DNA of 64,000 nucleotides from Octopus sinensis (GCF_006345805.1 NC_043001.1:10974001-11038000), one strand, 5' to 3'; shown: positions 1,204 to 59,885, counted from the first letter of the stretch. Numbers and translations: made by a program. The notes: a model not told the origin generated them from the letters alone.

Positions 1204-1204
1204 T

Positions 1205-1242
<38 letters not shown>

Positions 1243-1350: not shown

Positions 1351-1760
1351 CTGGTTTCAGTCATTAGATTACGGTCATTCTGAGAGCACAGCCTTGGTCA
1401 AAAAAATCGACACAAGTACGCAGTTTTTTAAGGGTCCAAAATATTCTACCGGACTCTCTCATGAACCGCTAAGTTACGGAAACCTAAACACACAAACACC
1501 AGTTGTTAAAAGGAAGGTGGTGGGGAACAAAGACACACACACGTGTTTGTGTGTGCGTGTGCGTGTGTGTGTGTGCGTGTGTGTGCATGTGTGCATGTGG
1601 GATTCTTTCAGTTTCCGTCTACCAAATCCATGTACAAGGCTTTGCTCGAGCTGAGTCTATCGTAGAAGTCACTTGTCCAAGGTGCTCAGTAGTAGGACTG
1701 AACCGGAGACCTTTGTGGTTGGGAAGCAAGCTTCTGACTACCCAGCCACGCTTGCGCCTA
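1351..1760 (-). mobile_element. SINE family B copy (diverged)
   Basis: Reverse match to 14199-14602, including the internal (TG)n tract. Confidence 0.75.
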
Positions 1761-2793: not shown

Positions 2794-3375
2794 CTTTTCT
2801 GCTCTAGGCACAAGGCTCGAAATTTTGGGGGAGGGAGCCAGTCGATTACATCGACCCCAGTGCGTAACTAGTACTTAATTTATCGACCCCGAAAGAATGA
2901 AAGGCAAAGTCGACCTCGGCGGAATTTGAACTCAGAGTGTAGCAACAGGCGAAATACCCATTTCTTTACTACCCACAAGGGGCTAAACACAGAGGGGACA
3001 AACAAGGACAGACAAACGGATTAAGTCGATTATATCGACCCCAGTGCGTAACTGGTACTTATTTAATCGACCCCGAAAGAATGAAAGGCAAAGTCGACCT
3101 CGGCGGAATTTGAACTCAGAGTGTAGCAACAGGCGAAATACCCATTTCTTTACTACCCACAAGGGGCTAAACACAGAGGGGACAAACAAGGACAGACAAA
3201 CGGATTAAGTCGATTATATCGACCCCAATGCGTAACTGGTACTTATTTAATCGACCCCGAAAGGATGAAAGGCAAAGTGGACCTCGGCGGAATTTGAACT
3301 CAGAGCGTAGCGGCAGACGAAATACAGTTACGCATTTCGCCCGGCGTGCTAACGTTTCTGCCAGATCTCCGCCTT
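2794..3375 (-). mobile_element. SINE family C (Deu/Nin-like core) tandem multimer
   Basis: Head at 3326-3375, junctions at 2957/2958 and 3141/3142 (184-bp period); core GCCTTTCATCCTTTCGGGGTCGAT...AAGTACCAG resembles the Deu/Nin SINE domain. Confidence 0.85.
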
Positions 3376-7934: not shown

Positions 7935-9500
7935 CACTGTGCAGCAAATTTCAGGTTCCCAAAAAGTACAAGTTAAGTAAGACTTGTTTCAGGGTCAAAT
8001 AATTGTCCTGATTCTGATTCTGACCTTTCTTTCTCCAGATTAGGCACCGTTTTCCTCTACCATGAACCCTATGTTTTATAATATACTGCATAATGTTGCG
8101 TATTGAACACAACATTGCAAATACTGAAAGTTACAAAAAACAAAACGAAAATTTAGTTGATATAACAAAACATATATTGGTTATGAATTAAAAACACACC
8201 TGTCAGTTTAAGCGAATTTCGACCTTCTAAGACTCTTGTGAGGAGTGTGCTCTTCTTTGTTTATACCCCTGCAGTAGTCTGACAACATGCCAGGTTTCCA
8301 CTTTCCTTTGAATTGTCGCTCCATCACTGAAATATCCTGATGGAATCTTTCGCCATGTTCATCCCTCACATCACCAAGATTTTCCGCAAAAAAATCCAAA
8401 TGAGAGTGAAGCACATGAACATTTAGAGACATGTTACATCCCATATCATGGTAATGACTCAGCAGATCATTCACAACTTACACATAGTCTTATGAACGAT
8501 GGTTGCTCAGGAAGTTATCGCAAACTTTCTTGAATGACTCAAAGGCAAGCTTCTCTTTACTCTTGAGATGTGTGATGAAGGTTTCATCAAGTACAATTTT
8601 TCGAATTTGGGGCCCTATGAAGAAACCTTCTTTAATTTTAGCTTGACTCAGGGAAGGGAACTTTTCTGCAAGATATGCAAATGCATAGGATTCCTTGTCC
8701 AAGGCTTTCACAAATTGCTTAAACTAAGTTTAATATGCAAAGGTGGTAAAAAAATTATCACTTTCCACAAGTTGTTTGTGCATGATGTTGTGTTTTCCTT
8801 GCTCAATTCCATCTTGGATCGGCCAGTCCTTGCTTACATAATGTTCAGCTCTTGCTCTGGAATTCCATAAGCATACGATGCAGCAAAATGTAGTATAGCC
8901 AAGCTGAAGGCCAGTAAGCATGGCCACAACCTTAAAATCTGCACAAATATGCCAGATATGGCCATCATACTGTATGCTTGTGAAAATTGCTTTCAGATTT
9001 TCATATGATTCTTTCATGGTTGTGCTATAAGCTATGGGAACAGAAAGCAGAGTGCTACCATTGTGTAGCAGAACAGCGTTGATGCTGTCCTTCGATGCAT
9101 CTATGAAAAGTCGCCGGTTGGTTTTATCATATGGTATTTCCAGTTGCTCAAAAAGTTCAGTGATGTCATTACAAATGCATAAGTCATCTTTCATGGCGAA
9201 TAATGCAAGCAGATCCTCTGTACGTTTTCTGTACAGTGTTATCTTCACACATTTCTCAAGGAGATTACGTTCTTGGAGGATTTCAGACACAAATCATACT
9301 TCCTCATCGATACTTCCCCAATCGACATAAATGTGTCGGTCAAGACCTTCCAAAAACTGAACAAATGTAAACATCTTGAAATAGAGTTTGGTAAAAAGGG
9401 GAACCTCAAGACTAGAACAGTACCTGTTGCCATAGGCCCCTAAGGGATGATAGCAAAAGTGGATGATTGTTCCTTGTCTCAGATACCAGGAAATCAAAAG
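7935..9500 (-). mobile_element. Decayed Chapaev/CMC-superfamily DNA transposon (3' TIR plus transposase core)
   Basis: Terminus CACTGTGCAGCAAATT at 7935; transposase fragments in three frames; no second TIR found. Confidence 0.75.
8208..9433 (-). pseudogene. Chapaev-like DDE transposase, frameshifted
   Basis: RLFIDASK (D), ICADFK (D), CCIVCLW (C2C motif), KIKEGFFIGPQIRK, HVLHSHLDFF (H-x-H motif), DEHGERFHQDI (E); split over ORFs 8730-9290, 8490-8711 and 8208-8474. Confidence 0.8.
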
Positions 9501-13821: not shown

Positions 13822-14198
13822 AACAGAGAGAGAGAGATTTGACTTTTGATAAACCGTTACCATAGCACGGAATGCGTCGATGAAGGGAAGTTCATTGCTA
13901 TTTGGTTGTCCACAACTGCAACACTATTCAAAAGAATAGAAACTTAAGTCTGGCGTAAGAACATAATAAAACAAACGAATAGGTTATCAGGCACAGCTAT
14001 CATTTCTTCATTAAGAATCTTCAGTGTAGCGTAAACACAGTACAGTCAGGTATGTAGTGTGCAAGGCATCCGTAAGGATTTGCCGCACGTTATCCATCTC
14101 TCAACTCATCAGATTCACCAACTAAAGAAGAGAGCAATGATATGCCTCTGATGAATCAATAGTTTATCAGTGAAATTTCAAATTAGAATTACCAATAT

Positions 14199-14602
14199 AG
14201 GCGCAGGAGTGGTTGTGTGGTAAGTAGCTTGCTTACCAACCACATGGTTCCGGGTTGAGTCCCACTTGGGAAAGTATCTTCTACTATAGCTTCAGGCCGA
14301 CCAAAGCCTTGTGAGTGGATTTGGTAGACGGAAACTGAAAGAAGCCCGTCGTATATATGCATGTATATATATATGTGCGTGTATGTTTGTGTGTCTGTGT
14401 TTGTCCCCCTAGCATTGCTTGACAACCGATGCTGGTGTGTTTATGTCCCCGTAACTTAGCGGTTCGGCAAAAGAGACCGATAGAATAAGTACTGGGCTTA
14501 CAAAGAATAAGTCCCGGGGTCGAGTTGCTCGGCTAAAGGCGGTGCTCCAGAATGGCCGCAGTCAACTGACTGAAACAAGTAAAAGTGTAAAGAGAGTAAA
14601 AA
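14199..14602 (+). mobile_element. tRNA-derived SINE, family B
   Basis: Head AGGCGCAGGAGTGGTTGTGTGGTAAG...GGTTGAGTCC; central GTGAGTGGATTTGGTAGACGGAAACTGAAAGAAG; internal (TA/TG)n; tail GACTGAAACAAGTAAAAG; many copies in the window. Confidence 0.85.
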
Positions 14603-15966: not shown

Positions 15967-16187
15967 CTTTACTCTTTTGCTATTTTACTTGTTTCAGTCA
16001 GTTGACTGCGGCCATGCTGGAGCACCGGCTTTAGTCGAGCAAATCGACCCCGGGACTTATTCTTTTTTGTAAGCCCAGTACTTATTCTATCGGTCTCTTT
16101 TGCCGAACCGCTAAGTGACGGGGACGTAAACACACCAGCATCGGTTGTCAAGCAATGCAAGGGGGACAAACGCAGACACACAAACAC

Positions 16188-16220
<33 letters not shown>

Positions 16221-16391
16221 CATATATACGACAGGCTTCTTTCAGTTTCCGTCTACCAAATCCACTCACAAGGCTTTGGTCAGCCCGAGGCTATAGTAGA
16301 AGGCACTTGTCCAAGGAGCTAAGCAGTGGGACTGAACCCGGAACCATGTGGCTGGTAAGCAAGCTACTTACCACACAGCCACTCCTACGCC
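15967..16391 (-). mobile_element. SINE family B copy
   Basis: Full-length reverse match to 14199-14602. Confidence 0.85.
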
Positions 16392-16596
16392 GATTTGCTG
16401 TATATTATTTCATTTAATTAAATAAATACTAACTGCAATAATCTTCCAATAACATCGGAGCAGCTAAATCCTCCGAGGAGAAACTCCCAGCTCCTTTTTC
16501 TTTGTTTTATATCATACCATATCCTTAGACAGTCTTGAACCCATAACAAATCCGAAGCCTCACCATCAAGCAGATGCGAACTAAATGTCGGTATAT

Positions 16597-24384: not shown

Positions 24385-24882
24385 CTTTTCTTTTTAATGT
24401 TTTTACTTGTTTCAGTCATTTAACTGCGGCCATGTGTGTGTGTGCACGCGCGCGTGTGTGTATAAGTATATGTATATTCTCTCTTTTACTCTTTTACTTG
24501 TTTCAGTCATTTGACTGCGGCCATGCTGGAGCACCGCCTTTAGTCGAGCAAATCGACCCCGGGACTTATTCTTTGTAAGCCCAGTACTTATTCCATCGGT
24601 CTCTTTTGCCGAACCGCTAAGTGACGGGGACGTAAACACACCAGCATCGGTTGTCAAGCAATGCTAGAGGGACAAACACAAACACACAAACACACACACA
24701 TACATATATATATACATATATACGACAGGTTTCTTTCAGTTTCCGTCTGCCAAATCCACTCACAAGGCATTGGTCGGCCCGGGGATACAGCAGAAGACAC
24801 TTGCCCAAGATGCCACGCAGTGGGACTGAACCCGGAACCATGTGGTTGGTTAGCAAGCTACTTACCACACAACCACTCCTGC
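24385..24882 (-). mobile_element. SINE family B copy with a duplicated tail segment
   Basis: Full copy 24478-24882 plus an extra tail fragment 24385-24432. Confidence 0.85.
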
Positions 24883-24934
<52 letters not shown>

Positions 24935-28093: not shown

Positions 28094-28494
28094 ACTCTCT
28101 CTTTTACTCTTTTACTTGTTTCAGTCATTTGACTGCGGCCATGCTGGAGCACCGCCTTTAGTCGAGCAAATCGACCCCAGGACTTATTCTTTGTAAGCTC
28201 AGTACTTATTCTATCGGTCTCTTTTGCCGAACCGCTAGGTGACGGGGACGTAAACACACCAGCCTCGGTTGTCAAGCAATGCTAGGGGGACAAATACAGA
28301 CACACAAACACACACACATATATATATATACATACATATATACGACAGGCTTCTTTCAGTTTCCGTCTACCAAATCCACTCACAAGGCATTGGTCGGCCC
28401 GGGGCTATAGCAGAAGACACTTGCCCAAGATGCCACGCAGTGGGACTGAACCCGGAACCATGTGGTTGGTTAGCAAGCTACTTACCACACAGCC
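28094..28494 (-). mobile_element. SINE family B copy
   Basis: Reverse match to 14199-14602. Confidence 0.85.
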
Positions 28495-29061
28495 TTGCTT
28501 TATTTTATTTTATTTCATTTCTCCACTTTATTGTAACTTATCCATTTTTTATTTTATTTTATTTCTTCTCATCTTCATCCCTACCAATCCAAGAGTGCTA
28601 TGTCATCTTACTTTTTCTCAAATGTACCTCTAATACATAAATCTTATAATTTCCCATCGTATTACACTGATTCGACCCAAGCATCTCATTAACGTTACAC
28701 GTATCTGGGGAATATTTAATTGCTTATAATTTATTTCGCAAGTATGAATTTCAGTTGATCGAACAGCAGCGGACTGCTCCTCGTTGAGATCGACGAAGAA
28801 TCCATAAGTGAGGATAAAATAACTAATAGTAAGACAATGAGATTGATTCCTGATAAGAATTCACTCCAAAACTTGACTAAACAAATCGATACCTTTCCAT
28901 ATCATGTAGAAAGAGTTTTCAAATAGAGTTTGAAGCTTTGAATAAGGAGTCCATTACTTGAAACTTGATTCTTGGTTATAGCCATTTCACTTCCTCTAGA
29001 CGCCTAATGTCTTTGAGAAAGCCATAAATATCACACAATCTTACTTCTCATCTTCACTTAA

Positions 29062-34253: not shown

Positions 34254-34344
34254 CTGTTCTTGCTTTTGTTAAACTCCAGCTCAGTTCTGATCTAGCGGAC
34301 TTACAATTTAAGACATTACAGCCGTGACCAAACCGCCTTTATAT

Positions 34345-35135
34345 CTATTTCTTTACTACCCACAAGGGGCTAAACACAGAGGGGACAAACAAGGACCAAC
34401 AAACTGATTAAGTCGATTATATCGACCCCAGTGCGTAACTGGTACTTATTTAATCGACCCCGAAAGGAGGAAAGGCAAAGTCGACCTCGGCGGAATTTGA
34501 ACTCAGAACGTAGCAGCAGGCGAAATACCTATTTCTTTGCTGCCCACAAGGGGTTACACACAGAGAGGACACACAAGGATAGACAAACGGATTAAGTCGA
34601 TTATATCGGCCCCAGTGCGTAACTAGTACTTAATTTATAGACCCCGAAAGGAGGAAAGGCAAAGTCGACCTCGGCGGAATTTGAACTCAGAACGTAGCAG
34701 CAGGCGAAATACCTATTTCTTTGCTGCCCACAAGGGGCTACACACAGAGAGGACAAACAAGGATAGACAAACGGATTAAGTCGATTATATCGGCCCCAGT
34801 GCGTAACTAGTACTTAATTTATCGACCCCGAAAGGAGGAAAGGCAAAGTCGACCTCGGCGGAATTTGAACTCAGAACGTAGCAGCAGGCGAAATACCTAT
34901 TTCTTTATAACCCACAAGGGGCTAAACACAGAGAGGACAAACAAGGATAGACAAACGGATTAAGTCGATTATATCGACCCCAGTGCGTAACTGGTACTTA
35001 TTTAATCGACCCCGAAAGGATGAAAGGCAAAGTCGACCTCGGCGGAATTTGAACTCAGAACGTAGCAGCAGGCGAAATACCGCTAAGCGTTTCAGCTGGC
35101 GTGCTAACGATTCTGCCAACTCACCACCTTTACCG
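34345..35135 (-). mobile_element. SINE family C tandem multimer, head plus 4 x 184 bp
   Basis: Junctions at 34528/9, 34712/3 and 34896/7; single head at 35081-35135. Confidence 0.9.
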
Positions 35136-35628: not shown

Positions 35629-35987
35629 CTGTAAAGGAACATTTACAAGGCCGTTAAGACTGCTAGAAATACAAGTAAAATATCCATGAAATCACGGTTT
35701 GCCATCTTTATAGAGGAAGACTTGTCATGTGATGTAGTATCCAAATGTTTGCAGGTATGGCTAAAATTAATGTCTTTGGTTGGATACCAATTCTATCACT
35801 GGAGAAATGGCTCTAAGCAATAAACAAATATGTATACACGTAACGCGCGCGCATGTGCTTACATGCATACAAACTAAGATATACACACGCACATTTTCTC
35901 TGTCTCTCTCTTTCTCTCACATACATATTCATACGGATGCACATTTATTTAATTGGCCAAGTGGTGAAGTGTGCTTCATAATGTTCG

Positions 35988-36062
35988 GGTTGCAAATTTT
36001 TTTTCCCCACGAGAGTTCTGGACCCCAGTAATGAACTCATTTGCATACAGCCAATCAGAGCT
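35988..36062 (-). repeat. Isolated inverted partial monomer of the 152-bp array (TIR-like)
   Basis: GCAAATTTT...CCCCACGAGAGTTCTGGACCCCAGTAATGAACTCATTTGCATACAGCCAATCAGAG is the reverse complement of the array's last unit (41968-42035). Confidence 0.9.
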
Positions 36063-36087
36063 CATCTTGACCTTGTTGTCATGTTAC

Positions 36088-36157
36088 CAAACACACTCTA
36101 CCAAGTAAACTTGAGACGAAGAACGGTGTTGTAAGTCGACCGATCGCCAAGTTATGC
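36088..36157 (-). CDS. Candidate exon 2 (ITWRSVDLQHRSSSQVYLVECV-)
   Basis: Acceptor CTAATTACTTGTCTCCTAATATCAG; donor TG|GTAACA chosen for phase compatibility, alternative donors exist. Confidence 0.3.
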
Positions 36158-36307
36158 CTGATATTAGGAGACAAGTAATTAGACAGATTTGCCTCGAGAC
36201 CTATTATCGGATTTTGTTATATTTTGTTATATCGACCCCATATGGTAAAGATGTGGAAGCGAAAAAAATGAGTCGAGGGTGATGGTCTAGCAAACCTCTC
36301 CCCTTAC

Positions 36308-36356
36308 TATTGTACAAAGTAACCAACAACATAAATAACGACACAGAGGCAGCCAT
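36308..36356 (-). CDS. Candidate exon 1, signal-peptide-like (MAASVSLFMLLVTLYN-)
   Basis: ATG at 36356 with an upstream in-frame stop; phase-1 donor A|GTAAGG; ab initio only. Confidence 0.35.
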
Positions 36357-36471
36357 AGTTGAGACAAGAACAAGAACAACAAAAGTTATTAAAAGAGAAA
36401 AGAAGCATGGTCATTGCTTAGCCAAGTGACCTTATCTTATCGAACATCACTCGATATGCGCACATAAATAA

Positions 36472-39400
36472 GTTTGATATTTGATCTCTGATTGGCTGTA
36501 TGCAAATAAGTTCATAAATGGTGTCCGGAACTCTCGTGGAAAAAAGAATTCGCGGGCCGGTCTGTGAAAGTCCCGACCATTATTTCGTAGTCACGCCGTG
36601 TCACCACCATAGTTGATTAAATTAGTTTGATAGTTGATCTCTGATTGGCTGTATGCAAATAAGTTCATAAATGGTGTCCGGAACTCTCGTGGAAAAAAGA
36701 ATTCGCGGGCCGGTCTGTGAAAGTCCCGACCATTATTTCGTAGTCACGCCGTGTCACCACCATAGTTGATTAACTTAGTTTTATAGTTGATCTCTGATTG
36801 GCTGTATGTAAATAATATCATAACTGGGGTCCGGAACTCACGTGGGAAAAATAATTCGCAGGCCGGTCTGTGAAAGTCCCGACCATTGTTTCGTAGTCAC
36901 GCCGTGTCACCACCATAGTTGATTAAATTAGTTTGATAGTTGATCTCTGATTGGCTGTATGCAAATAAGTTCATAACTGGGGGTCCGGAATCTCGTGGGA
37001 AAAAATTCGCGGCCCGGTCACACAAAGTCCCCACCATTCTTACGTAGTCCTGCCGTGTCACCACCATAGTTGATTAAATTAGTTTGATATTTGATCTCAG
37101 ATTGGCTGTATGTAAATAAGTTCATAACTGGGGTCCGGAACTCTCGTGGGAAAAAGAATGTGTGGCCCGGTCTCTCAATGTCCCGACCATTGTTTTGTAG
37201 TCACGCCGTGTCGGCACCATAGTTGATTAAATTAGTTTGGTAGTGGATCTCTGATTGGCTGTATGCAAATAAGTTCATAAATGGGGTCCGGAACGCTCGT
37301 GGGAAAATATTCGTGGCCCGGTCACTCAAAGTCCCCACCATTCTTACGTAGTCCTGCCGTGTCAACCCAATAGTTGATTAAATTAGTTTGATATTTGATC
37401 TCTGATTGGCTGTATGCAATTAAGTTCATATCTGGGGTCCGGAAGTCTCGTGAGAAGAAGAATTCGCGGCCCGGTCTGTCAAAGTCCTAACGATTGTTTC
37501 GTAGTCACGCCGTGTCACCACCATAGTTGATTAAATTAGTTTGATAGTTGATCTCTGATTGGCTGTATGCAAATAAGTTCATAACTGGTGTCCGGAACTC
37601 TCGTGGGTAAAAGAATTCGCGTCCCCGTCTCTATAAATCCCAAGCATTCTGACGTAGTCCCGCGGTGCCACCACCATAGTTGATTAAGTTAGTTTGATAG
37701 TTGATCTCTGATTGGCTGTATGCAAATAAGTACTTAACTGGGGTCCGGACGTCTCGTGGGAAAAAGAATTCGCCGACCGGTCTCTATAAATCCGGAGCAT
37801 TCTGACGTTGTCACGCCGTGTCACCACCATAGTTGATGAAATTAGTTTGATATGTGATCTCTGATTGGCTGAATGTAAATCAGTTCAAAAATGGTATCCG
37901 GAACTCTCGTGGGAAAAATTTTGCGTTCCGGTCACTCAAAGTCCCGACCATTCTTACGTAGTCCTACCATGTCACCACCATAGTTGATTAAATTAGTTTG
38001 ATAGTTGATCTCTGATTGGCTGTATGCAAATAAGTTCATAACTAGGGTCCGGAACTCTCGTGGGAAAAAGAATGCGTGCCCCAGTCTCTCAACGTCCCGA
38101 CCATTGTTTCGCAGTCACGCCGTGCCGCCACCATAGTTGATTCAATTAGTTTCATAGTCGATCTTTTATTGGCTGCATGCAAATAAGTTCATAACTGGCG
38201 TCCGGAACTCTCGTGGGTAAAAAATTCACGGCCCGGTCACTCAAACTCCAGACCATTCTTACGTAGTCACGCCGTGTCACCACCATAGTTGATTAAATTA
38301 GTTTGATAGTTGATCTCTGATTGGCTGTATACAAATAAGTTCATAACTGGGTCCGGAACTCTCGTGGGAAAAAAGAATGCGTGGCCCGGTCACTCAAAGT
38401 CCAGACCATTGTTTCGTAGTCACGCCGTGCCGCCACAATAGTTGATTTAATTAGTTTGATATTTTAGCTTTGATTGGCTGTATGCTAATAAGTCCATAAA
38501 TGGGGTACGGAACTCTAGTGGGAAAAAGAATGCGTGGCCCCGTCTCTCAAAGTCCCCACCATTGTTTCGTAGTCGCGCCGTGCCGCCACCATAGTTGATT
38601 TAATTAGTTTGATAGTTGATCTCTGATTGGCTGTATGCAAATATGTTCATTACTGGGGTCCGGAACTCTCGTGGGAAAAAGAATTCGCGGCCCGGTCTCT
38701 ATAAATCCGGAGCATTCTAACGTTGTCACGCCGTGTCACCGCCATAGTTGATTAAATTAGTTTGATATTTGATCTCTGATTGGCTGTATGCAAATAAATT
38801 CATAACTGGGGTCCTGAAGTCTCGTGGGAAGAAGAATTCACGGCCCGGTCTCTCAAAGTCCGACCATTGTTTTATAGTCCCGCCGTGTCACCACCATAGT
38901 TGATTAAATTAGTTTGATATTTTAGCTTTGATCGGCTGTATGCAAATAAGTTCATAACTGGGGTCCGGAACTCTCGTGGGAAAAAGAATTCGCAGCCCGG
39001 TCTCTCAAAGTCCCGACCATTGTTTCATAGTCACGCCGTGTCACCACCATAGTTGATTAAATTAGTTTGATGTTTTAGCTTTGATTGGCTGTATGCAAAT
39101 AAGTTCATAACTGGGGTCCGAAACTCTCGTGGGAAAAAATTCGCTGCCCATTCTGTCAAAGTCCTCACCATTGTTTCGTCGTCACGTCGTGTCACCACCA
39201 TAGTTGATTAAATGAGTTTGATAGTTCATCTCTGATTGGCTGTATTCAAATAAGTTCATAAATGGGGTCCGGAACTCTCGTGGGAAAAAGAATGCGTGGC
39301 CCGGTCTCTCAAAGTCCCAGCCATTGTTTCGTAGTCACGCCGTGCCGCCACCATAGTTGATTTAATTAGTTTCAAAGTTGATCTCTGATTGGCTGTATGC

Positions 39401-42037
39401 AAACAAGTTCATAACTAGGGTCCGGAACTCTCGTGGGAAAAAATTGCGGCCCGGTGACTCAAAGTCCCGGCCATTTTTACGTTGTCCTGCCGTCTCACCA
39501 CCACAGTAGATTAAATTAGCTTGATAGTTGATCTCTGATTGGCTGTATGCAAATAAGTTTATAACTTGTGTCCGGAACTCTCGTGGGAAAAAGACTTCGT
39601 GTCTCGGTCTCTATAAATCCGGAGCATTCTGATGTTGTCATGCCATGTCACCACAATAGTTGATGAAATTAGTTTGATAGTTGATCTCTGATTGGCTGTA
39701 TGCAAATAAGTACATAAATGGTGTCCGGAACTCTCGTGGGAAAAAATTCGTGGCCCGGTCACTCAAAGTCCCCAGCATTCTTACGTAGTCCTGCCGTGTC
39801 AACCCCATAGTTTGTTTAAATTACTTTGATATTTGATCTCTGATTGGCTGTATGCAAATAATTTCATAACTGGGTCCGGAACTCCCGTGAGAAGAAAAAA
39901 TCGCGGCCCGGTCTGTCAAAGTCTTGAGCATTGTTGCGTAGTCACGCCGTGTCACCACCATAGTTGATGAAATTAATTTGATATTTGATCTTTGATTGGC
40001 TGTATGCAAATAAGTTCATAACTGGGTTCGGAACTCTCGTGGGAAAAAGACTTCGTGTCCCGGTCTCTATAAATCCGGAGCATTCTGATGTTGTCATGTC
40101 ATGTCACCACAATAGTTGATGAAATTAGTTTGATAGTTGATCTCTGATTGGCTGTATGCAAATAAGTACATAAATGGTGTCCGGAACTCTCGTGGGAAAA
40201 AATTTGTGGCCCGGTCACTCAAAGTCCCCACCATTCTTACGTAGTCCTGCCGTGTCAACCCCATAGTTTGTTTAAATTAGTTTGATATTTGATCTCTGAT
40301 TGGCTGTATGCAAATAATTTCATAACTGGGTCCGGAACTCCCGTGAGAAGAAAAATTCGCGGCCCGGTCTGTCAAAGTCTTGAGCATTGTTGCGTAGTCA
40401 CGCCGTGTCACCACCATAGTTGATGAAATTAGTTTGATAGTTGATCTCTGATTGGCTGTATGCAAATAAGTTCATAACTGGGTCTGGAACTCTCGTGGGA
40501 AAAAAAATCGCGACCTGGTCTGTCAAAGTCCAGACCATTCTTACGTAGTCCTGCCGTGTCACCACCATATTTGATTAAATTAGTTTGATATTTGATCTCT
40601 GATTGGCTGTATGCAAATAAGATCATAACTAGGGTCCGGAACTCTCGCGGGAAAAAATTTCGCGACCCGGTCTGTCAAAGTCCCGACCATTGTTTCGTAG
40701 TCACGCCGTGTCACCACCATTGTTGATTAAATTAGTTTGATATTTTAGCTTTGATTGGCTGTATGCAAATAAGTTCATAACTGGGGTCCGGAAGTCTCGT
40801 GTGAAAAAGAATTCGCGGCCCGGTCACTCAAAGTCCCGACCATTGTTTCATTGTCACGCCGTGTCACCACCATAGTTGATTAAATTAGTTTGATGTTTTA
40901 GCTTTGATTGGCTGTATGCAAATAAGTACATAACTGGGGTCCGAAACTCTCGTGGGAAAAAATTCGCGGCCCGTTCTGTCAAAGTCCCGACCATTGTTTC
41001 GTAGTCGCGCCGTGTCACCACCATATTTGTTTAAATGAGTTTGATTGTTCATCTCTGATTGGCTGTATGCAAACAAGTTCATAACTGGGGTCCGGAACTC
41101 TCGTGGGAAAAAGAATTTGCGCCCCCGTCTCTATAAATCTCGAGCATTCTGACGTAGTCCCGCCGTGTCACCACCATAGTTGATTAAATTAGTTTGATAG
41201 TTGATCTCTGATTGGCTGTATGCAAATAAGTTCATAACTGGGGTCCGGAACTCTCGTGGGAAAAAATTTCGCGACCCGGTCTGTCAAAGTCCCGACCATT
41301 GTTTCGTAGTCACGCCGTGTCACCACCATTGTTGATTAAATTAGTTTGATATTTTAGCTTTGATTGGCTGTATGTAAATCAGTTCATAACTGGGGTCCGG
41401 AAGTATCGTGGGAAGAAGAATTCACGGCCCGGACTCTCAAAGTCCCGACCATTGTTTTATAGTCCTGCCGTGTCACCACCATAGTTGATTAAATTAGTTT
41501 GATATTTTAGCTTTGATTGGCTGTATGCAAATAAGTTAATAACTGGGGTCCGGAACTCTCGTGGGAAAAGATTCGTGGCCCGGTCACTCAAAGTCCCCAC
41601 CATTCTTACGTAGTCCTGCCGTGTCAACCCCATAGTTGATTAAATTAGTCTGATATTTGATCTCTGATTGGCTGTATGCAATTAAGTTCATATCTGGGGT
41701 CCGGAACTCTCGTGAGAAGAAGAATTCGCGGCTCGGTCTGTCAAAGTCCCGACCATTGTTTCGTAGTCACGCCGTGTCACCACCATAGTTGATTAAATGA
41801 GTTTGATAGTTCATCTCTGATTGGCTGTATGCAAACAAGTTCATAACTGGGATCCGGAATTCTCGTGGGAAAAAGAATTCGCGGCCCCGTCTCTATAAAT
41901 TCCGAGCATTCTGACGTAGTCCCGCCGTGTCACCACCATAGTTGATTAAATTAGTTTGATATTTTAGCTTTGATTGGCTGTATGCAAATAAGTTCATTAC
42001 TGGGGTCCGGAACTTTGGTGGGAAAAAATTTGCGTCC
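36472..42037. repeat. Tandem satellite-like array, 37 monomers of ~152 bp
   Basis: Block (C/T)TGATTGGCTGTATGCAAAT recurs every 151-153 bp from 36488 to 41970, with a few variant copies; conserved GTGTCACCACCATAGTTGATTAAATTAGTTTGAT; variable middle segment. Confidence 0.97.
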
Positions 42038-42159
42038 AGGTTTACTTCCACTGCGTGCCAACTACTCTTCTATTGCAGCCTCGAAGCGACTAATGTGTCC
42101 GGCGTGGATTTGGTAGACTATAGCAGAAAGAAGTCTGGCGTGTATGTACACACACACAC

Positions 42160-42192
<33 letters not shown>

Positions 42193-42464
42193 CACGTGCC
42201 TGAGAGTACTTTACAGCATATAAATGAAACTTCGATCGCACAATAACTGTGAAAACAGCTTAAAAGATCGGGTGAATACCGTTAGAACGTCAGCAAGTCC
42301 TGTGTGCATATTTCCTTGATCTTCTAAGCTGTTCCCACAGGCATTCTAGGTTCGAGACTTCCTTTGTTTGCTGTCAGATACCGCCAACCCACTCGGTACT
42401 TCAAATGTTTGTGTGTAAAAATGTACTCCTATCTCAAAAGTTATTATTAGGTTACGTTTATCAA

Positions 42465-42735
42465 TTTGTGTTGCTAGATTCCTGATGTGAAATCGTGTGT
42501 TGAAAGGGATATTGTTGTATTTCGGGACGGTCACTTCTTGTTGCCAAATAAAACACACGCACCATACCTTCGTTCTTCACTCGTTTATTACTCTTTTTAT
42601 TCTAAGTCATGTCCATTGTCTGGGAATCTTTCGTCACACATCTGAGACCTCTTCAGCGACACTTTCCATCTTCGTGTATGCTCTCGCTCCTCTTATACCA
42701 TTCTTCATATTAGGCATTTAAAAGAACGGTATTTA
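42465..42735 (-). mobile_element. Penelope-like pLTR fragment with hammerhead motif
   Basis: Shares its end with 46772-46850; minus strand CTGAAGA-G-GTC-loop-GAC-GAAA-GAT-TC at 42617-42662. Confidence 0.6.
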
Positions 42736-43211
42736 CTGTCAGGGATCGTTTATCTTAATGGTATAAAACGCACATCCGAAATTTAAAAGATTCTGTGGTT
42801 GTTCCTCTGTAGCGACTGGCTGGCTACCCCTTACCCTCTTCTAAGGGTATTTACCAGATCTTCTAAGCTGTTTTTACAGATATTCTACGTCTGAGAATTT
42901 CTTTTATTTTCTGCAAAATGTACACTTATGTATGTATATATCTATTTGAGTGTGTCTTTCTGCTTGTCCCCACCGCCGCTTGACAAGCCGGTGTTAGTTT
43001 GTTTACGTCCCCGTGACTTAGCAATCAGGGCAAAAGCTATCGATAGAATGCGTGCCAGGCTCTTTAAAGGAAATACGTTCTAAGATGGATTCATTCGACT
43101 AAACCGTCCACGTCAATGTACTAGCATGGCCGCAGTCCAATGATTGAAACACGTAAATAATAAAAGATATAGACAGATGATTTGACTAAGATCAAAGTGT
43201 AGATGATTCGT

Positions 43212-54632: not shown

Positions 54633-57600
54633 TCATAGGACTATGCTCAAGGTGGCTTCGTCATTCATACGTGCCATTCTTGCTACATTCACCCATCTTT
54701 TTTTAAAACATTCGCTAGACAAAACTTGCCTCTCTACTCTCACTTTCCTTTTCAAGTGGTACTTGGAAGAAGTTGATGAGAGATTGACCAGAGAGGAAGT
54801 GTTTGTCTCCAATCCTTTCAGACGCGTCCACCAGATACATTCTTTCGCCATAGCCACAAGGATGATGAAAATAGCTCTTCCTTCCCGTTTAAGGAAGGAG
54901 GCGTGACAATATTGACGATAGACTCAGCTGATAAACCGACTCGTCCCACACGTGACAGCAGTTGTTCGACATAAGCCCACAGGTCGGAAATTGTTGGACA
55001 CTGAACGAGTGCGTGCAGAACGGTTTCGTCGCTCTGACCGCATCTCGGGCAGGTCGGCCCCGTGTTTCTCGAGCCGTGTCTGTAGAGCTTATCCCGAACG
55101 GGTAGCGCTTCTCGGTAGCACTGCCAGGCCAGGGATCTCTGGAAGTTGTCCATGGGCCTGGCCCGAAAGTCGTCCCGAACAGGCGGGTCAGGTACTCCTC
55201 GTCGCCGTCCAGGTTCGCCCCGAGCTCGTCGTCGTACTTCCCCTCCACTAAATCCCTATAGAATGCTTTGGTTGTGTTGAAGTCACTTAAGGTCGACCCA
55301 GGACGGCAGAGTTGCTTGAGAGCAACGCGACACTCGCGCGGTGCCATTCGCCCTTCCTCGGCCTCTTTTTGATCCACGACTGCAGTTCGGTCATGGAGAC
55401 GAGCTGCGGGAAAGCGTGCCTCACAAACGGCGACCACACCTGTTCACCGTCGTCTACATAGAGCCAGAGATGTCGCAGTCTCAGCGCGTGTCTGCGCATC
55501 ATCAACCACGGCATGCCCAGCCCTCCTTTTACGGGTGTTGACAGCAAATGGATCGCCTGACCATCGGGACGCATCCTTTCCACAAGAAGCGAAAGAGGAT
55601 GCGTTGTTGTAGTTTGGTGATGGTAGGGTCGGGACAAGGTACGACGGTCAGGCGGTAGTAGATGACGGACGCGATGTACGTGTTCGCCACCTCCGCTCGA
55701 CCTTTTAGGGACAGTTTCTCTCGGCCCATTGCCGGGCGAGAGTGACCACCCTACTCGTTATCTCGTTCCAGTTCTTCTCCACTTGGAGGTCCGGACCAAA
55801 CCAGACCCCGAGCAACTCAACCGGGCCGTCGGTCCAGCGTCCCACGACGGAGGGCTGGTGGACGGCATGGGCTTGCTTCTCCAGGTGCCTAGTCGCAAGC
55901 CCACTGACTTTTCCCGGTTGATTTTCGCTCCTGTCACCGCTTCGTAGTTTTTCAGTGTCTCGCCGACCAGCTCGATGTGCTCGTGGCTAGACACTATGAC
56001 GGTGACGTCGTCCGCATATGCAGACACGCTCGTCCCGCATCCAATTCTCGCGGGATGCCCCTTAGAGTCGCCAGCTTCCGCAGTAGTGGCTCAAGAGTCA
56101 ATACGTATAGAAGCGCCCGAGGGGGCATCCCTGACGGACCGAACGTGCAATGTCGAAAGGTGTCGATAGATGTCCATTTACGCGAATTACCGAACGGATG
56201 CCTCTGTACAAGGCAGCTATCCAGCCGCGGAGAGACGGGACCGAAACCAGCCGCTCTCAGGACTGCCTCCAAGTATCGATGGTCTACCCTATCAAAGGCT
56301 TTCGATTGATCCAAGTTGATCAGGGCCCCACCCATGCCAGGTTCGTTAACTACCCTGTCTATGATGTAGCGCATCAGATGGAGGTTGTCATGGATGGTCC
56401 GGCCTGGCACGGCGCATGTTTGCGCCTTGTCGACCAGTTTCTCGATGACAAGCGCCAACCTCTTGGCTAGCACCTTGGCCAAAATTTTCAAGTCTGCATT
56501 AAGCAGAGTGATGGGCCTAAAGTTATCTATTACATTTCCCTTGTTTAGATCTTTCTTCAGCAGTGTTACGGCTCCTCGGCTCACAAAACCAGGAATGCTC
56601 CCGTTTTACTGCCAGTTGCAGTACACCGCCGCCAAGAGATCTCCAAACAAGTCTGGCATACAATTGTAAAGCTCGTAGGGTAGACCATCCAAACCCGGTG
56701 ATTTGTCCCTCGAGCATTCTGCCATCGCTTTCCGCACTTCCGCCGCCGTGATGGCACCTTCGCAGCACCCTGCCCTTCTTGTCGAGAGTCGTGGTAGGCT
56801 ATGTAGGTAGGCACTGAAGTCCACCCTACGTTCTTGCCCTCCACTCGTTCCGAACAGTCGGGCAAAATGCTGCTGAAAGGCCTCACACATTTTACTTGGC
56901 TCGAGCAATTCGCGCCCCTGTTCATCTACCAGTGACCGAATGGTGGCTTTGTTGCCCTGTTGCGCCTCTGCCACCCGGGCCCTCTCGCGGCTCCAACACC
57001 TTCGTTCCTTAGAGCACGCATCCTAGCTCTGACAGCACATCCTTCGTGTTTAGCGTTGAAGTGTTGGTCGAGGGCCAACCTCGCCGCCAAAACGTCGGAT
57101 GCGATGCCGCTTCTAATTGCCTCTTCTAGCTTCTTAAGTAGCTCACCCTCTACTCTATTTCTATCTATGGCTAGTGCTTTGCTGTACCTAATCGCTTCTG
57201 CTTTTACTGCTCTCTTGAGGGCAAACCACCATTTGTTGTTGATGATGGCTCCCGTCAAAGCCCTCTTTACTAGTGTGCTAATCCGGTCTCTGAAAACTTG
57301 TCTCGATGGGAAAGACGCGTTTAGTTTCCAGTATCCGGGACCCTGCCTAAGTGTCTTACCTAAGTCTAGCGTACATGTCACAAGTTTGTGATCCGTGTAG
57401 CTGACTATGTGGAATTGTGGACATCCTATGCTATCTCTATCTACTGTCCTACACAGTATCCTATCTAGATACGATCTCGACGACCCGATGCGGTTGCTCC
57501 ATGTCCACGTTGGCGCATTCGGGTGGTCTAGTCGGAACCTGTCAGACAGTTGAAAGCGTCTGAGCAGGTCTCTGAGGCATTTGCATCCCCGTCTATTCCT

Positions 57601-58070
57601 ATCTCTACCCACGTAGTCTACATGCGTGTCCAAGGTAGCATTCCAATCCCCCACTAAGAGTAAAGGACGAGACGTTCCCAAGAAAAACTTCTAGACGTTG
57701 AAAGAATCCGCCCGACCTGTTAAGGGCGGTGCGTAAACTGATACGAGTCGAAAAGCGCACCCATTGCTGCCGTCGACATCCAGGACGACCAGTCTACCCT
57801 CCGGGTCTACGAATATTGTCCTTACATTGAGATCCAGACTCTTGTGTGAAAAAGTACCGCGGTGCCACTACCGCCCATTCTCGGCAGACAGGGGGAAAAA
57901 TAAATGTTGAACTGTCCGCCAAACATGGTCTTTAGGGCCCGCGGATTGTGGAGTCTGGTCTCGCTTATGGCTATGATTTCTAACTTATGTGACTTTATGT
58001 CATTTAAGAGGTACCCTTGTTTCCAAGGGGACCCCAAGCCACGCGCATTTACACAACCAATCTTGATCAT
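54633..58070 (-). pseudogene. LINE ORF2: APE endonuclease plus reverse transcriptase, multiple frameshifts
   Basis: IGCVNARGL, IAISETR, LLVGDWNA, SYLDRILC, TDHKLV (APE); KSPGLDGLP, FRPITLLNADLKILAK, LDQSKAFDRVDH, YADDVTV (RT); CPRCGQSDETVLHALVQC. Confidence 0.92.
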
Positions 58071-58101
58071 AGTTCTAATGAATTAGAATACAGAGGGTTA
58101 C

Positions 58102-59885
58102 TTACTGCTCGAAAGTTTTTGCTTTCTCCTCCGTTGGTTTGTCCTCGAGAAGATCCCAGTACAGTTTCTTTGTGAGATATTTTTGGCATTTACCAACCGC
58201 ACTGGGGAAAATGCCTTTGAGTGTGTGGTGCAGACTTTTGGAGATGTGTAATATTTTGATGTGGTCTGGTGGTGTTGTGTATGGGTGATGTTTGTTTTTA
58301 TGTCATCTGTTATGTGTTTGTTTTTGATTGGATGTATTCCATCAAATTTGTGTTTTTGGTGTGTCTATGGCTGTGAGCATGTTTGCTGTATATGTTTTTG
58401 TGGTGTTGGTGGGTGTGGCTGTTGTTTGCGTTGGGTTTTGAAATGTCTTCGGGAGATGTATTTCCCCCTGCTTTGTTCGTGTTTGCATTTGGTTTGGTTG
58501 TGTTTCTGCTCTTTATTTTCCTTCTTTTGTGTAGCTATTTGCCATTCCTCACTGGTTCGTCTTCCGACGAAATTTCTGAGGAATCAGAAGGGGGTAGGGT
58601 ATGTTGTGGGCTTCTATGTATGTCTGTGTAAGTGGTTTGTGTTGTTGTTGGTTGTTGAGTGTTGTGGTGTGTTGAGTGCGGTATAAGGGATGGGGGATCA
58701 GTTTGTGTGTGTTTTCTTTGTTTTTCTGTTCCTTTGGGTTTTGCTGTTGATGGTGGTGTTGGTATTTTTTCAGGTGTCGAGTGGTTTTTGGTTGATGACG
58801 GATTAGCTTGGTGTGCTTCTCTTGTCGTCTTCTGTGTTGATGGTGGTGTGGGTAGTAGAGCTTTTTTTCCGGAGTGCTTTGGTTGTGGTAGTGGTTGTTG
58901 TTGTTGCTCTTGGTGTGCAGTGGTTGGGCACGTCTTTTTCAAGTGTGTTTCGCTTCCACACAAATAGCAGCGTGGTCGCCTGCCCTCTACCACTATATAG
59001 AGTTTGTAGCCTCCTGGCAGTTCTATAGCGGTGGGTATCTTCTCTCTTGCTGCTTCATCCAATTGAAGCAGGAATTCGATTGATTTGCCCACATAGTCTT
59101 TCTCTCCTAGAACCGCGATTTCCAGGATGTTTGTCTCTGACATTGTCTCTGACATTTCAAAGCAGATGGCAGAGACCAACCATGTGTTTTTCGACATCAA
59201 ATGGTATGTTTTTTATTTGGACTTTCGTGACCCTTTTGTTTAAATAGACTGGTATCATTACCAAGTCGTCCGAATGCAGCTCCAATGTGGAAAAACGTTT
59301 TGCTAAACTTTCGTTGAGGAAACGTACTTGGACTGTACCAAATTTGTTTCCCCAACTGATATATTCCTTGGAGTCCCATGCAGGACGAAGGTATTTATCG
59401 ATTTTTTCCTGCGGTGCATTTGCTGTTCTTCTTGTTTTTTTGTTTATTACTTTATAAATTATTGTTTTTTTTTGTGTGTTTTCCACGATGTGTTGTGGAA
59501 TATGAAGGTGAAATTTGTCTCCTTCTTTGGAGAAGAGTGCCTTTGTGCGGTTTATCTCTTGTGTGGTGAATGTTACAATTGTTCTTTTTGTTTTGTTACG
59601 TCCGCAAAATTCGTTTTGAATTTGGCAGTAGAAGTGTTAATTGTGGCAGTGTTAATTGAAGTCATGGTAGGTGTTGGTGTTGGCGGTGATTAGCAGCAGA
59701 AGGCTTGGATGTAGCATTTGACGTCGTAGTAGTGGTGTTGGTGTTGGGCGGTGTTGTCTTTGGTAGGTGGCTTTGTGCCAATTTCGTTGTTGTTGTTGTT
59801 GGTGGTGATGGTGGTGGTGCTGGCATTCATGTTTTCGTTTGTATTCATTTTTGAAATCCCTTTCTCTGTCCCTTATCATCAACAA
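58102..59885 (-). pseudogene. LINE ORF1 (RRM-like region plus CCHC zinc knuckle), frameshifted
   Basis: GTVQVRFLNE...VTKVQIKNIPFDV, then GRRPRCYLCGSETHLKKTC (C-x2-C-x4-H-x4-C); ends ...KAKTFEQ* just before ORF2; the start is uncertain and could lie near 60096. Confidence 0.75.

What the first reader, a model, noticed from the sequence alone, without database searches (positions are those of the whole stretch)
36472..42037. 37-copy tandem array of a CCAAT box plus octamer module
Seen: the most conserved part of the ~152-bp monomer is CTGATTGGCTGTATGCAAAT, a CCAAT box (minus strand CAGCCAATCAG) 4 bp from an ATGCAAAT octamer. A few copies carry ATGTAAAT or other variants. About 7 monomers also carry TATAAAT ~55 bp downstream, and the unit is CpG-rich against an AT-rich background. 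Established: CCAAT binds NF-Y and ATGCAAAT binds POU/Oct factors; the pair is the core of histone H2B-type promoters. Inference: the array could be a massively amplified promoter/enhancer or a transcription-factor sink, with roughly nucleosome-length periodicity.
Basis: partly seen in the sequence, partly recalled or inferred. Interest (0 to 1): 0.8.

Follow-up and report, generated by a model that had tools for sequence, protein, structure and literature searches.

The report
Transposon-borne 153-bp tandem repeat array
A 5.6-kb run of 37 copies of a 153-bp non-coding unit is real; it is most likely the amplified end of an old DNA transposon that landed in a SINE, and its least variable bases look like a CCAAT box next to an octamer, so it is an ordinary kind of repeat with an untested chance of regulatory activity.

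Summary
There are 36 full monomers and one partial monomer of 150-153 bp at 36465-42033. The 20-mer CTGATTGGCTGTATGCAAAT occurs in every copy with at most 3 mismatches (38 matches against 0.01 expected). It is the least variable block of the unit (P about 0.01), but that rests on the CCAAT half: the core GATTGGCTGTAT is almost invariant, while the octamer is intact in only 25 of 37 copies.

Its outer end falls at the same monomer position as the far end of the array. Both ends abut an imperfect 9-bp direct repeat (GTTCGGGTT/GTCCAGGTT). The two flanks read as the two halves of one tRNA-like SINE. The best reading is therefore a non-autonomous transposon with terminal inverted repeats whose right repeat and subterminal DNA were amplified in tandem, as in foldback/Tetris elements and repeat-carrying MITEs.

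The unit is not coding, has no Rfam match and shows no RNA-structure signal. It is not a histone H2B promoter. No relatives were reachable, so mobility and any binding of NF-Y or POU factors remain untested. Interest is low to moderate.

The parts
35954..35991 (+). Left flank. Weak match to the 5' part (positions 11-58, A-box-like head) of a tRNA-like SINE family ('SINE-B') that has several copies in the window.
   Evidence: The local alignment alone is not significant (score 24 against shuffles 18.7 +/- 3.3). An extension anchored at the junction scores 20, P=0.003-0.005 against shuffles and random genomic 60-mers.
35983..35991 (+). Candidate target-site duplication, left copy: GTTCGGGTT.
   Evidence: 7 of 9 bases identical to 42034-42042, directly abutting both repeat ends. 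P=1.3e-3 (uniform) to 4e-3 (window 9-mers), before correcting for about 10 lengths tried. Corresponds to SINE-B positions about 50-58.
35992..36067 (-). Left terminal inverted repeat: an inverted partial monomer (consensus positions 89 to 15). It contains an exact copy of the 20-mer at 36039-36058.
   Evidence: blastn 88% over 82 bp; inverted-repeat pairs with many monomers at 84-91%; pairwise alignments; nhmmer E=2e-21, model positions 16-99; exact 20-mer.
36068..36464 (.). Internal spacer of 397 bp, single-copy within this window, non-coding.
   Evidence: No match elsewhere in the window. No significant similarity to the monomer or to the 184-bp SINE-like unit. Only short ORFs.
36465..41946 (+). 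36 full monomers of 150-153 bp, head to tail. Each carries the CCAAT-like box (ATTGG on this strand) 4 bp from an octamer or octamer variant.
   Evidence: Mean pairwise identity is 0.853 at every lag, so there is no higher-order repeat, only a few block duplications.
41947..42033 (+). Last, partial monomer (consensus 1-89). Its part at 41961-42033 is the right terminal inverted repeat and ends in ...AAAATTTGC like the left one.
   Evidence: Alignment of the reverse complement of the left end with the right end: about 89% over 71 columns, both stopping at TTTGC. nhmmer ends at model position 98 here and 99 for the inverted copy.
42034..42042 (+). Candidate target-site duplication, right copy: GTCCAGGTT.
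   Evidence: These bases also align to SINE-B positions 50-58. They can alternatively be read as monomer consensus 90-98, so the boundary is uncertain by about 9 bp.
42035..42141 (+). Right flank: a 5'-truncated SINE-B copy (SINE positions 51-165), followed by its (CA)n stretch.
   Evidence: Multiple alignment with five other copies in the window. Local alignment score 90 to the SINE-B consensus.

Best explanation
The array is the tandemly amplified end of an old, non-autonomous DNA transposon with terminal inverted repeats (35992-42033) that inserted into a tRNA-like SINE.

The element has a 76-bp left inverted repeat, a 397-bp non-coding middle, and a right end in which the terminal 153 bp (inverted repeat plus about 78 bp of subterminal DNA) have been copied to 36.6 units. 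The copying was probably by replication slippage or unequal exchange, followed by block duplications.

The CCAAT/octamer block lies inside the inverted repeat, about 45-65 bp from the tip, pointing inward. It is most simply a functional piece of the transposon end: an inward-facing promoter or a docking site for host factors or transposase. It was multiplied passively with the repeat.

Shown: the array, the inverted copy, the coinciding ends, the lower variability of the block, and the absence of coding or RNA-structure signals. Inferred: transposition, the target-site duplication, the mechanism of amplification and any protein binding.
For: - An inverted partial monomer lies 397 bp left of the array.
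- Its outer end and the far end of the array fall at the same place in the monomer: nhmmer model positions 99 and 98, and both alignments stop at AAAATTTGC. About 3% is expected for two independent truncation points within 2 of 153 positions (own estimate).
- A 9-bp direct repeat with 7 of 9 identities abuts both ends.
- The right flank is a SINE-B copy that starts only at SINE position about 51 (score 90). The left flank extends colinearly from the junction as SINE positions 58 back to 11 (P=0.003-0.005). Joining the flanks and removing 9 bp raises the SINE alignment score from 90 to 102. This is an 'empty site'.
- The left repeat is slightly more distant from the monomers (82.5%) than they are from each other over the same segment (86.8%), as expected for the un-amplified partner end.
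- The unit is non-coding, has no Rfam family and no structure signal (z from -0.8 to +2.1).
- The same window holds other mobile-element segments amplified in tandem (184-bp unit).
- Precedents: Tetris foldback elements have tandem repeats in their inverted repeats that grew into kb-size arrays, with 8-10 bp target-site duplications (PMC4079207). Repeat-carrying MITEs and Helentrons occur in molluscs (PMC3879986, PMC7492417).
Against: - There is only one locus. No second copy exists in the window and no relatives were found in any collection, so mobility is not shown.
- The left-flank SINE match is weak. It is not significant without the anchor, and the anchor was chosen after looking at the data.
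- The duplication is imperfect and nearly palindromic. The same 9 bases can be read as monomer positions 90-98, in which case there is no duplication.
- No transposase is present and no superfamily could be assigned.
- The amplification is on one side only and runs to the very tip, unlike Tetris.
- The array starts abruptly at consensus position 1, not at position 90 as the simplest terminal-duplication model predicts.
Confidence: 0.6

Rival explanations
1. An ordinary dispersed satellite or minisatellite array that grew in place by unequal exchange. The inverted fragment at 35992-36067 is an orphan left by a local inversion or strand switch at the array edge. No transposon is involved.
For: - Monomers are old and heterogeneous (mean 85% identity at all lags), with block duplications typical of unequal exchange.
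- There is no transposase and no second copy.
- The 9 bp at each end can be read as monomer sequence.
- The left-flank SINE match is not significant without an anchor.
Against: This does not explain why the inverted fragment and the distal array end stop at the same monomer position. It also does not explain why the flanks line up as two halves of one SINE with an 8-9 bp overlap.
Confidence: 0.22
2. Whatever its origin, the array is kept because it works as a cluster of 36-37 composite NF-Y (CCAAT) and POU (octamer) sites: a strong enhancer, an internal promoter for repeat transcripts, or a factor sink. This is compatible with a transposon origin.
For: - The 20-mer is the least variable block (P=0.009-0.016), and the core GATTGGCTGTAT is almost invariant.
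- The block is exact in the solitary inverted copy, which is otherwise about 12% diverged.
- CAGCCAATCAG is a full extended NF-Y consensus (own knowledge).
- CpGs are largely kept (249 of 324 cells; CpG observed/expected 1.05).
- Precedents: NF-Y binds the CCAAT-bearing tandem repeats of ERV9/LTR12, which matter for beta-globin locus expression (PMC3730095; PMC12065363). Some satellites are reported to have internal promoters (PMC2220036).
Against: - The octamer is intact in only 25 of 37 copies and is barely better kept than blocks without a known motif (cons 71-80 and 141-150 are as good).
- Conservation among copies of one array is not independent evidence of selection, because copies share history and homogenisation.
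- CpG sites show a threefold excess of transitions (0.086 against 0.030), a hint of past methylation.
- No gene or ORF is nearby. TATAAAT is in only one monomer subtype.
- The motif was picked post hoc from many known motifs. The same bases also fit an NFI site in 9 of 10 positions (own knowledge).
Confidence: 0.12
3. An array of small genes: a structured small RNA or ribozyme unit, as in hammerhead-bearing satellites, or a 51-codon protein repeat (153 = 3 x 51).
For: The period is divisible by three. Minus-strand ORFs of 46-67 aa recur. Octamer-containing snRNA-type promoters drive newt satellite 2 (cited in PMC2220036; the octamer detail is from memory).
Against: - Every frame of the consensus has at least one stop per unit.
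- Unit lengths of 150-153 bp break the frame.
- No protein in 5.8 billion resembles the ORF peptides.
- No Rfam hit at gathering score or at E<=10 apart from two chance hits far below threshold. No tRNA.
- Folding energy is not lower than shuffles on either strand.
Confidence: 0.03
4. A remnant of a histone H2A/H2B intergenic promoter that was amplified.
For: A CCAAT box and an octamer lie close together, as in vertebrate and sea-urchin H2B promoters (own knowledge).
Against: - No histone-like ORF anywhere in the window, and none in the unit.
- The box order and the spacing to TATAAAT differ from H2B promoters.
- TATAAAT is in only 7 of 37 units.
Confidence: 0.02

Closest known systems
Tetris foldback transposon and its TIR-220 satellite (Drosophila virilis; PMC4079207)
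   Same: Non-autonomous element with inverted ends. A tandem repeat belongs to the inverted repeat and has grown to a kb-size array. Target-site duplication of 8-10 bp (here a candidate of 9 bp). No coding capacity.
   Different: - In Tetris the repeats lie inside long inverted repeats, behind an outer flanking domain, and on both arms. Here one arm has less than one unit, the other has 36.6, and the array runs to the tip.
- Unit is 153 bp, not about 220 bp.
- No sequence relation was tested or expected.
- Only one locus is known here.
Tandem-repeat-containing MITEs and Helentron-derived elements of molluscs (DTC84/pearl, PMC3879986; Cg_HINE, PMC7492417)
   Same: Short satellite-like arrays of units around 150-170 bp are dispersed in mollusc genomes as the central part of non-autonomous mobile elements. 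Array length is variable, and monomer variants are arranged in blocks.
   Different: - Those elements have unrelated left and right flanks, with 11-12-bp subterminal inverted repeats, a microsatellite in the left flank and a 3' palindrome.
- None of these features is seen here.
- Here the monomer itself contains the inverted repeat.
U3 tandem repeats of ERV9/LTR12 bound by NF-Y (PMC3730095, PMC12065363)
   Same: A mobile-element segment made of tandem units that each carry a CCAAT box.
   Different: - LTR12 is a retroviral LTR of primates with far fewer repeats (14 in the beta-globin copy; PMC3730095).
- Its partner motif is GATA, not an octamer.
- Binding is demonstrated there and untested here.
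Satellites with internal promoters (beetle PRAT; newt satellite 2, cited there; PMC2220036)
   Same: Promoter-like elements lie within every monomer and in the most conserved part of the unit.
   Different: Transcription was measured for those satellites. Newt satellite 2 encodes a hammerhead ribozyme. Here there is no ribozyme or Rfam match and no expression data.
Histone H2B promoter (CCAAT + octamer + TATA)
   Same: A perfect octamer lies beside a consensus CCAAT box.
   Different: There is no histone gene. The order and spacing differ. A TATA box is present in a minority of units only.

Membership tests
Tandem repeat / satellite-like DNA | Head-to-tail copies of one unit, far beyond chance | tested here: met
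   36.5 copies, period 153, 85% matches; 37 profile hits on the plus strand; 38 motif matches against 0.01 expected.
Tandem repeat / satellite-like DNA | Classical satellite: very long arrays in heterochromatin, many loci, homogenised monomers or higher-order repeats | tested here: inconclusive
   The array is only 5.6 kb, lies among SINEs and microsatellites, and has 85% identity at all lags with no higher-order repeat. Genome-wide abundance could not be tested.
TIR-bounded non-autonomous DNA transposon (foldback/Tetris-like or MITE-like) | Terminal inverted repeats at both ends | tested here: met
   35992-36067 against 41961-42033, about 89% over 71 columns. The outer ends coincide in monomer coordinates.
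TIR-bounded non-autonomous DNA transposon (foldback/Tetris-like or MITE-like) | Target-site duplication abutting both ends | tested here: inconclusive
   GTTCGGGTT / GTCCAGGTT, 7 of 9 identical, P about 1e-3 to 4e-3 before multiple-length correction. The same bases can also be read as monomer sequence.
TIR-bounded non-autonomous DNA transposon (foldback/Tetris-like or MITE-like) | Empty site: the flanks join into a continuous sequence | tested here: inconclusive
   The right flank is clearly a 5'-truncated SINE-B (score 90). The left flank continues it only weakly (anchored P=0.003-0.005; unanchored not significant).
TIR-bounded non-autonomous DNA transposon (foldback/Tetris-like or MITE-like) | Multiple dispersed copies with the same ends (evidence of mobility); an autonomous partner with a transposase | not testable with these tools
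   No other copy in the window. The source genome is not in any searchable collection.
Foldback / Tetris-like | Tandem repeats inside both long inverted arms | tested here: not met
   The left arm holds 0.5 unit and the right holds 36.6 units. So it works like Tetris but is not shown to be a foldback element.
Helentron-type non-autonomous element (HINE) | Short subterminal inverted repeats, a microsatellite in the left flank, a 3' palindrome after the array | tested here: not met
   No microsatellite between 35992 and 36465. The sequence after the array is SINE-B, without a palindrome. Features are as listed in PMC7492417.
Histone H2B-type promoter | CCAAT and octamer upstream of a TATA box and a histone gene | tested here: not met
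   No ORF of at least 110 aa in or near the array and no histone-like ORF in the window. All frames of the unit are closed. TATAAAT is in 7 of 37 units, 57 bp from the octamer.
NF-Y / POU composite regulatory element | Consensus CCAAT box with flanks, and a consensus octamer | tested here: met
   CAGCCAATCAG on the minus strand in 26 of 37 units, CCAAT in 36 of 37, ATGCAAAT in 25 of 37. The consensus sequences are from own knowledge.
NF-Y / POU composite regulatory element | Factor binding, open chromatin, motif-dependent activity | not testable with these tools
   No functional data are available.
Small RNA gene or ribozyme array | Match to an RNA family or a stable conserved fold | tested here: not met
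   Rfam: nothing at gathering score; two chance hits at E 0.08 and 0.35, far below threshold. No tRNA. Folding z from -0.8 to +2.1.

The most novel reading that the evidence does not exclude
The inverted repeat of a mollusc DNA transposon family carries a composite host-factor site (NF-Y or NFI-type CCAAT box plus POU octamer) that is under selection. The 37-fold amplified version acts as a strong NF-Y/POU platform: an enhancer, a promoter of repeat transcripts or a factor sink.

This would be an invertebrate DNA-transposon counterpart of the NF-Y-bound LTR12 repeats. It would also be reminiscent of the adjacent NFI and Oct-1 sites in adenovirus inverted terminal repeats. That second parallel is recalled from memory, so it is a lead only.
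Probability: 0.1. Interest if true: 0.6.

Novelty: new member of a known kind. Interest (0 to 1): 0.3.

Why it matters
If the transposon reading is right, this locus is one more example, probably in a cephalopod-like genome where repeats are poorly catalogued, of how mobile-element ends seed satellite-like arrays. It also offers a datable case, because one insertion sits in a recognisable SINE.

The conserved CCAAT core inside the inverted repeat gives a concrete, cheap hypothesis: host NF-Y docking on a transposon end. If binding were shown, arrays of this family would be candidate regulatory platforms scattered through the genome. Without that, it is a routine repeat that should be masked, not a gene-regulatory discovery.

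Tried and rejected
- **Coding repeat:** all six frames of the consensus have stops. ORF peptides have no relatives.
- **RNA gene or ribozyme:** no Rfam match, no tRNA, no folding signal.
- **Higher-order repeat:** none; identity is flat with lag.
- **Related loci elsewhere:** exact 27-mer and 20-mer scans of metagenome, prokaryote-genome and viral collections gave only one chance hit, L001, a bacterial RNase III-like gene with no repeat. Literature string searches for the motif and SINE sequences found nothing.
- **Organism identification through LINE relatives:** hits came without names. A search for the assembly accession in papers found nothing. The cephalopod or octopus guess rests only on my memory of the SINE sequences.
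- **Monomer derived from SINE-B, or spacer derived from the 184-bp SINE-like unit:** not significant.
- **Degenerate monomers left of 36465:** none.
- **Helentron/HINE architecture:** features absent.
- **CENP-B-box-like motif:** checked by eye; absent.
- **Superfamily assignment from the TIR tip (GCAAATTTTTT...) and a 9-bp duplication:** not possible from one copy.
- **Papers on cephalopod satellites:** none describes this unit.


Full report
**1. The observation**

Tandem Repeats Finder reports one array at 36465-42027 with period 153, 36.5 copies, 85% matches and 1% indels. The anchor T[TC]GGCTG occurs 37 times, spaced 150-153 bp. A profile built from the monomers finds 36 full units and a last partial one at 41948-42042.

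The 20-mer CTGATTGGCTGTATGCAAAT is exact in 17 units and present with at most 3 mismatches in all 37. That gives 38 matches in the window against 0.01 expected from dinucleotide shuffles.

- The CCAAT pentamer (ATTGG on the plus strand) is intact in 36 of 37 units.
- The octamer is ATGCAAAT in 25, ATGTAAAT in 4, ATGCAAAC in 3, ATGCAATT in 2, plus three single variants.
- TATAAAT occurs in 7 units, 57 bp after the octamer. These 7 share a linked set of changes (CTCTATAAATCCGGAGCATTCTGA), so they form one monomer subtype spread by duplication.
- The array is only mildly GC- and CpG-enriched: GC 0.437 against 0.374, and CpG observed/expected 1.05 against 0.875 for the window.

The description is therefore correct. 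'CpG-rich' and 'nucleosome length' are loose.

**2. Is the motif the most conserved part?**

Yes, with a qualification. Mean identity to the consensus is 0.912. The seven best 20-bp windows all overlap the motif (0.964-0.974). The next block, ATAGTTGATTAAATTAGTTT at the unit junction, reaches 0.958, and the variable part is consensus 81-130 at 0.82-0.88.

I also counted parsimony steps on a tree of the monomers, to discount inherited changes.

- The motif has 21 steps (1.05 per site) against 1.85 per site overall (P=0.016).
- Against composition-matched non-CpG sites, 37.5 steps are expected (P=0.009).
- The signal is uneven. GATTGGCTGTAT has 0.33 steps per site and the octamer 1.25, against 1.97 for the rest.
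- Blocks without any named motif (consensus 71-80 and 141-150) are kept as well as the octamer.

Copies of one array share history and homogenisation. This is a hint of constraint, not proof.

**3. What it is not**

- *Not coding.* All six frames of the consensus contain a stop in every unit. Unit lengths of 150-153 bp break any frame. The recurrent 46-67-aa minus-strand ORFs have no relatives among 5.8 billion proteins.
- *Not a known RNA.* No Rfam family matches at gathering score, only two chance hits appear at E<=10, and there is no tRNA. Folding energies of the unit on either strand and in five phases are not lower than shuffles (z from -0.8 to +2.1).
- *No higher-order repeat.* Mean pairwise identity is 0.853 at every lag. 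There are a few block duplications: m1/m2, m21-23/m24-26, m17-18/m29-30 and m28/m32.
- *Not young.* With 15% divergence among units, the array is old rather than freshly homogenised.
- *CpG decay.* CpG sites show about three times the transition rate of other G/C sites (0.086 against 0.030 per cell). That is a mild sign of past methylation, although 77% of CpG cells are retained.

**4. What the surroundings show**

The window is eukaryotic, microsatellite-rich and full of SINE-like repeats. A degraded non-LTR retrotransposon lies at 54.8-59.2 kb. From memory the SINEs look cephalopod (octopus), but I could not verify this.

The key new fact is an inverted partial monomer at 35992-36067, 397 bp left of the array.

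- It matches by blastn at 88%, forms inverted-repeat pairs at 84-91%, and scores E=2e-21 with nhmmer.
- It covers consensus positions 89 back to 15 and contains an exact copy of the 20-mer.
- Its outer end and the distal end of the array stop at the same place in the unit. Both pairwise alignments end at ...AAAATTTGC, and the profile alignments end at model positions 99 and 98.
- Nothing else in the window resembles the unit or the 397-bp spacer.

**5. The flanks**

Directly outside the two ends lie GTTCGGGTT (35983-35991) and GTCCAGGTT (42034-42042). They are 7 of 9 identical. P is 1.3e-3 to 4e-3 for a fixed position and length, so about 1-4% after allowing for the ten lengths tried.

The right flank from 42035 is a copy of a tRNA-like SINE family with at least six other copies in the window, but it begins only at SINE position about 51 (score 90). 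The left flank, read outward from the junction, continues as SINE positions 58 back to 11.

- This left-flank match is weak and not significant as a free local alignment (24 against 18.7 +/- 3.3).
- It is unusual when anchored at the junction (score 20; P=0.003 against shuffles and 0.005 against random genomic 60-mers).
- Joining the flanks and removing 9 bp raises the SINE alignment score from 90 to 102.
- The unit itself is unrelated to this SINE.

Together these give the anatomy of an insertion with terminal inverted repeats and an 8-9-bp target-site duplication in a SINE head.

**6. Best explanation (confidence 0.6)**

An old non-autonomous DNA transposon spans 35992-42033. It consists of a 76-bp left inverted repeat, a 397-bp non-coding middle, and a right end whose terminal 153 bp (inverted repeat plus subterminal DNA) were amplified to 36.6 units and later shuffled by block duplications.

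The left repeat is a little further from the units (82.5%) than they are from each other over the same segment (86.8%). This fits an un-amplified partner end.

The CCAAT/octamer block lies inside the inverted repeat, 45-65 bp from the tip. Read inward it runs octamer, then CCAAT. It could be an inward-facing promoter or a docking site of the parent element, multiplied passively with the repeat.

Weak points:
- There is only one locus and no transposase.
- The duplication is imperfect and nearly palindromic, so its bases can also be read as unit positions 90-98.
- The left-flank match is weak.
- The array starts abruptly at consensus position 1.

**7. Rivals**

- (a) A plain satellite-like array with an orphan inverted fragment (0.22). 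This fits the heterogeneity, but not the coinciding ends or the SINE continuity.
- (b) A functional NF-Y/POU platform, compatible with a transposon origin (0.12). It is supported by the low variability of the CCAAT core, by the exact motif in the solitary inverted copy, and by precedents. It is weakened by the decaying octamer, the CpG transition excess, the absence of any nearby gene and the post hoc choice of motif. The same bases also fit the NFI palindrome TTGGC(N5)GCCAA in 9 of 10 positions (own knowledge).
- (c) A small-gene array (0.03), and (d) a histone-promoter remnant (0.02). Both fail direct tests.

**8. Comparison with what is known**

- *Tetris.* It works like the Tetris foldback element of Drosophila virilis, whose inverted repeats contain about 220-bp tandem repeats that grew into kb-size satellite arrays, with 8-10-bp duplications (PMC4079207). 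It is not shown to be a foldback element, because only one arm is repetitive.
- *Mollusc repeat-carrying elements.* It resembles the tandem-repeat-carrying MITEs and Helentron derivatives of bivalves in being a short dispersed array carried by a non-autonomous element (PMC3879986, PMC7492417). It lacks their defining flank features.
- *Satellites with internal promoters.* These are described in PMC2220036.
- *H2B-type promoter.* This is excluded.

**9. Verdict**

The better description is a transposon-derived satellite-like array, which is a new member of a known kind. Interest is 0.3.

The decisive step is a search of the source genome for further copies, end points, duplications and empty sites, followed by chromatin and transcript data and simple binding assays.

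Noticed in passing
window 2840-3325 and 34341-35081: 184-bp tandem repeats (2.6 and 4.0 copies, 94-96% matches) made of a SINE-like unit (…AGTCGATTATATCGACCCC…GGCGGAATTTGAACTCAGA…). The second is followed by the element's tail at 35082-35130. This is another case in the window of a mobile-element segment amplified in tandem.
   Followed up: partly
window ~1008-1235(-), 1590-1775(-), 14160-14404(+), 16186-16406(-), 24672-24900(-), 28100-28520(-), 42035-42145(+): A tRNA-like SINE family ('SINE-B') with A/B-box-like head and an internal TG/TA microsatellite. From memory it resembles octopus SINEs, which is my only clue to the organism.
   Followed up: partly
window 42146-42926: The SINE-B copy to the right of the array seems interrupted a second time. 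Its 5' part ends at 42145 and its 3' part resumes at 42927-43167. The ~780 bp between consist of a (CA)n run (42148-42195) and ~730 bp with 79-bp inverted repeats at 42210-42287 / 42839-42917 (78%). This may be another MITE-like insertion.
   Followed up: no
window 54818-59200, minus strand: A degraded non-LTR retrotransposon. Endonuclease (Exo_endo_phos), reverse transcriptase (RVT_1) and zf-RVT lie in separate, frameshifted ORFs, and a 221-aa upstream ORF has no Pfam match. This region is the GC-rich peak of the window (GC 0.55-0.59). Closest relatives are 64% identical.
   Followed up: partly
window 8730-9290, minus strand: A 186-aa ORF (…ICADFKVVAMLTGLQLGYTTFCCIVCLWNSRARAEHY…) with no Pfam match. 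It may be a fragment of an unclassified mobile-element protein.
   Followed up: no
monomer consensus 146-153 + 1-28 (e.g. window 36610-36645): Three to four short direct subrepeats (AGTTGAT / AGTTTGAT / AGTTGAT / CTCTGAT) straddle the unit junction, just inside the inner boundary of the inverted repeat. This is the kind of subterminal reiteration that transposases often bind (own knowledge). This block is as conserved as the CCAAT/octamer block.
   Followed up: no
window 36492-36506 and each unit: TTGGC-TGTAT-GCAAA within the 20-mer matches the NFI palindrome TTGGC(N5)GCCAA in 9 of 10 positions (own knowledge). The 'CCAAT box' could therefore be read by NFI-type rather than NF-Y-type factors. 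The near-invariant bases (GATTGGCTGTAT) do not discriminate between them.
   Followed up: no
L001 3627-3646: The only exact 20-mer match in the metagenome collection lies inside what looks like a bacterial RNase III gene, with no repeat. It is a chance hit, about the number expected for a 20-mer.
   Followed up: yes
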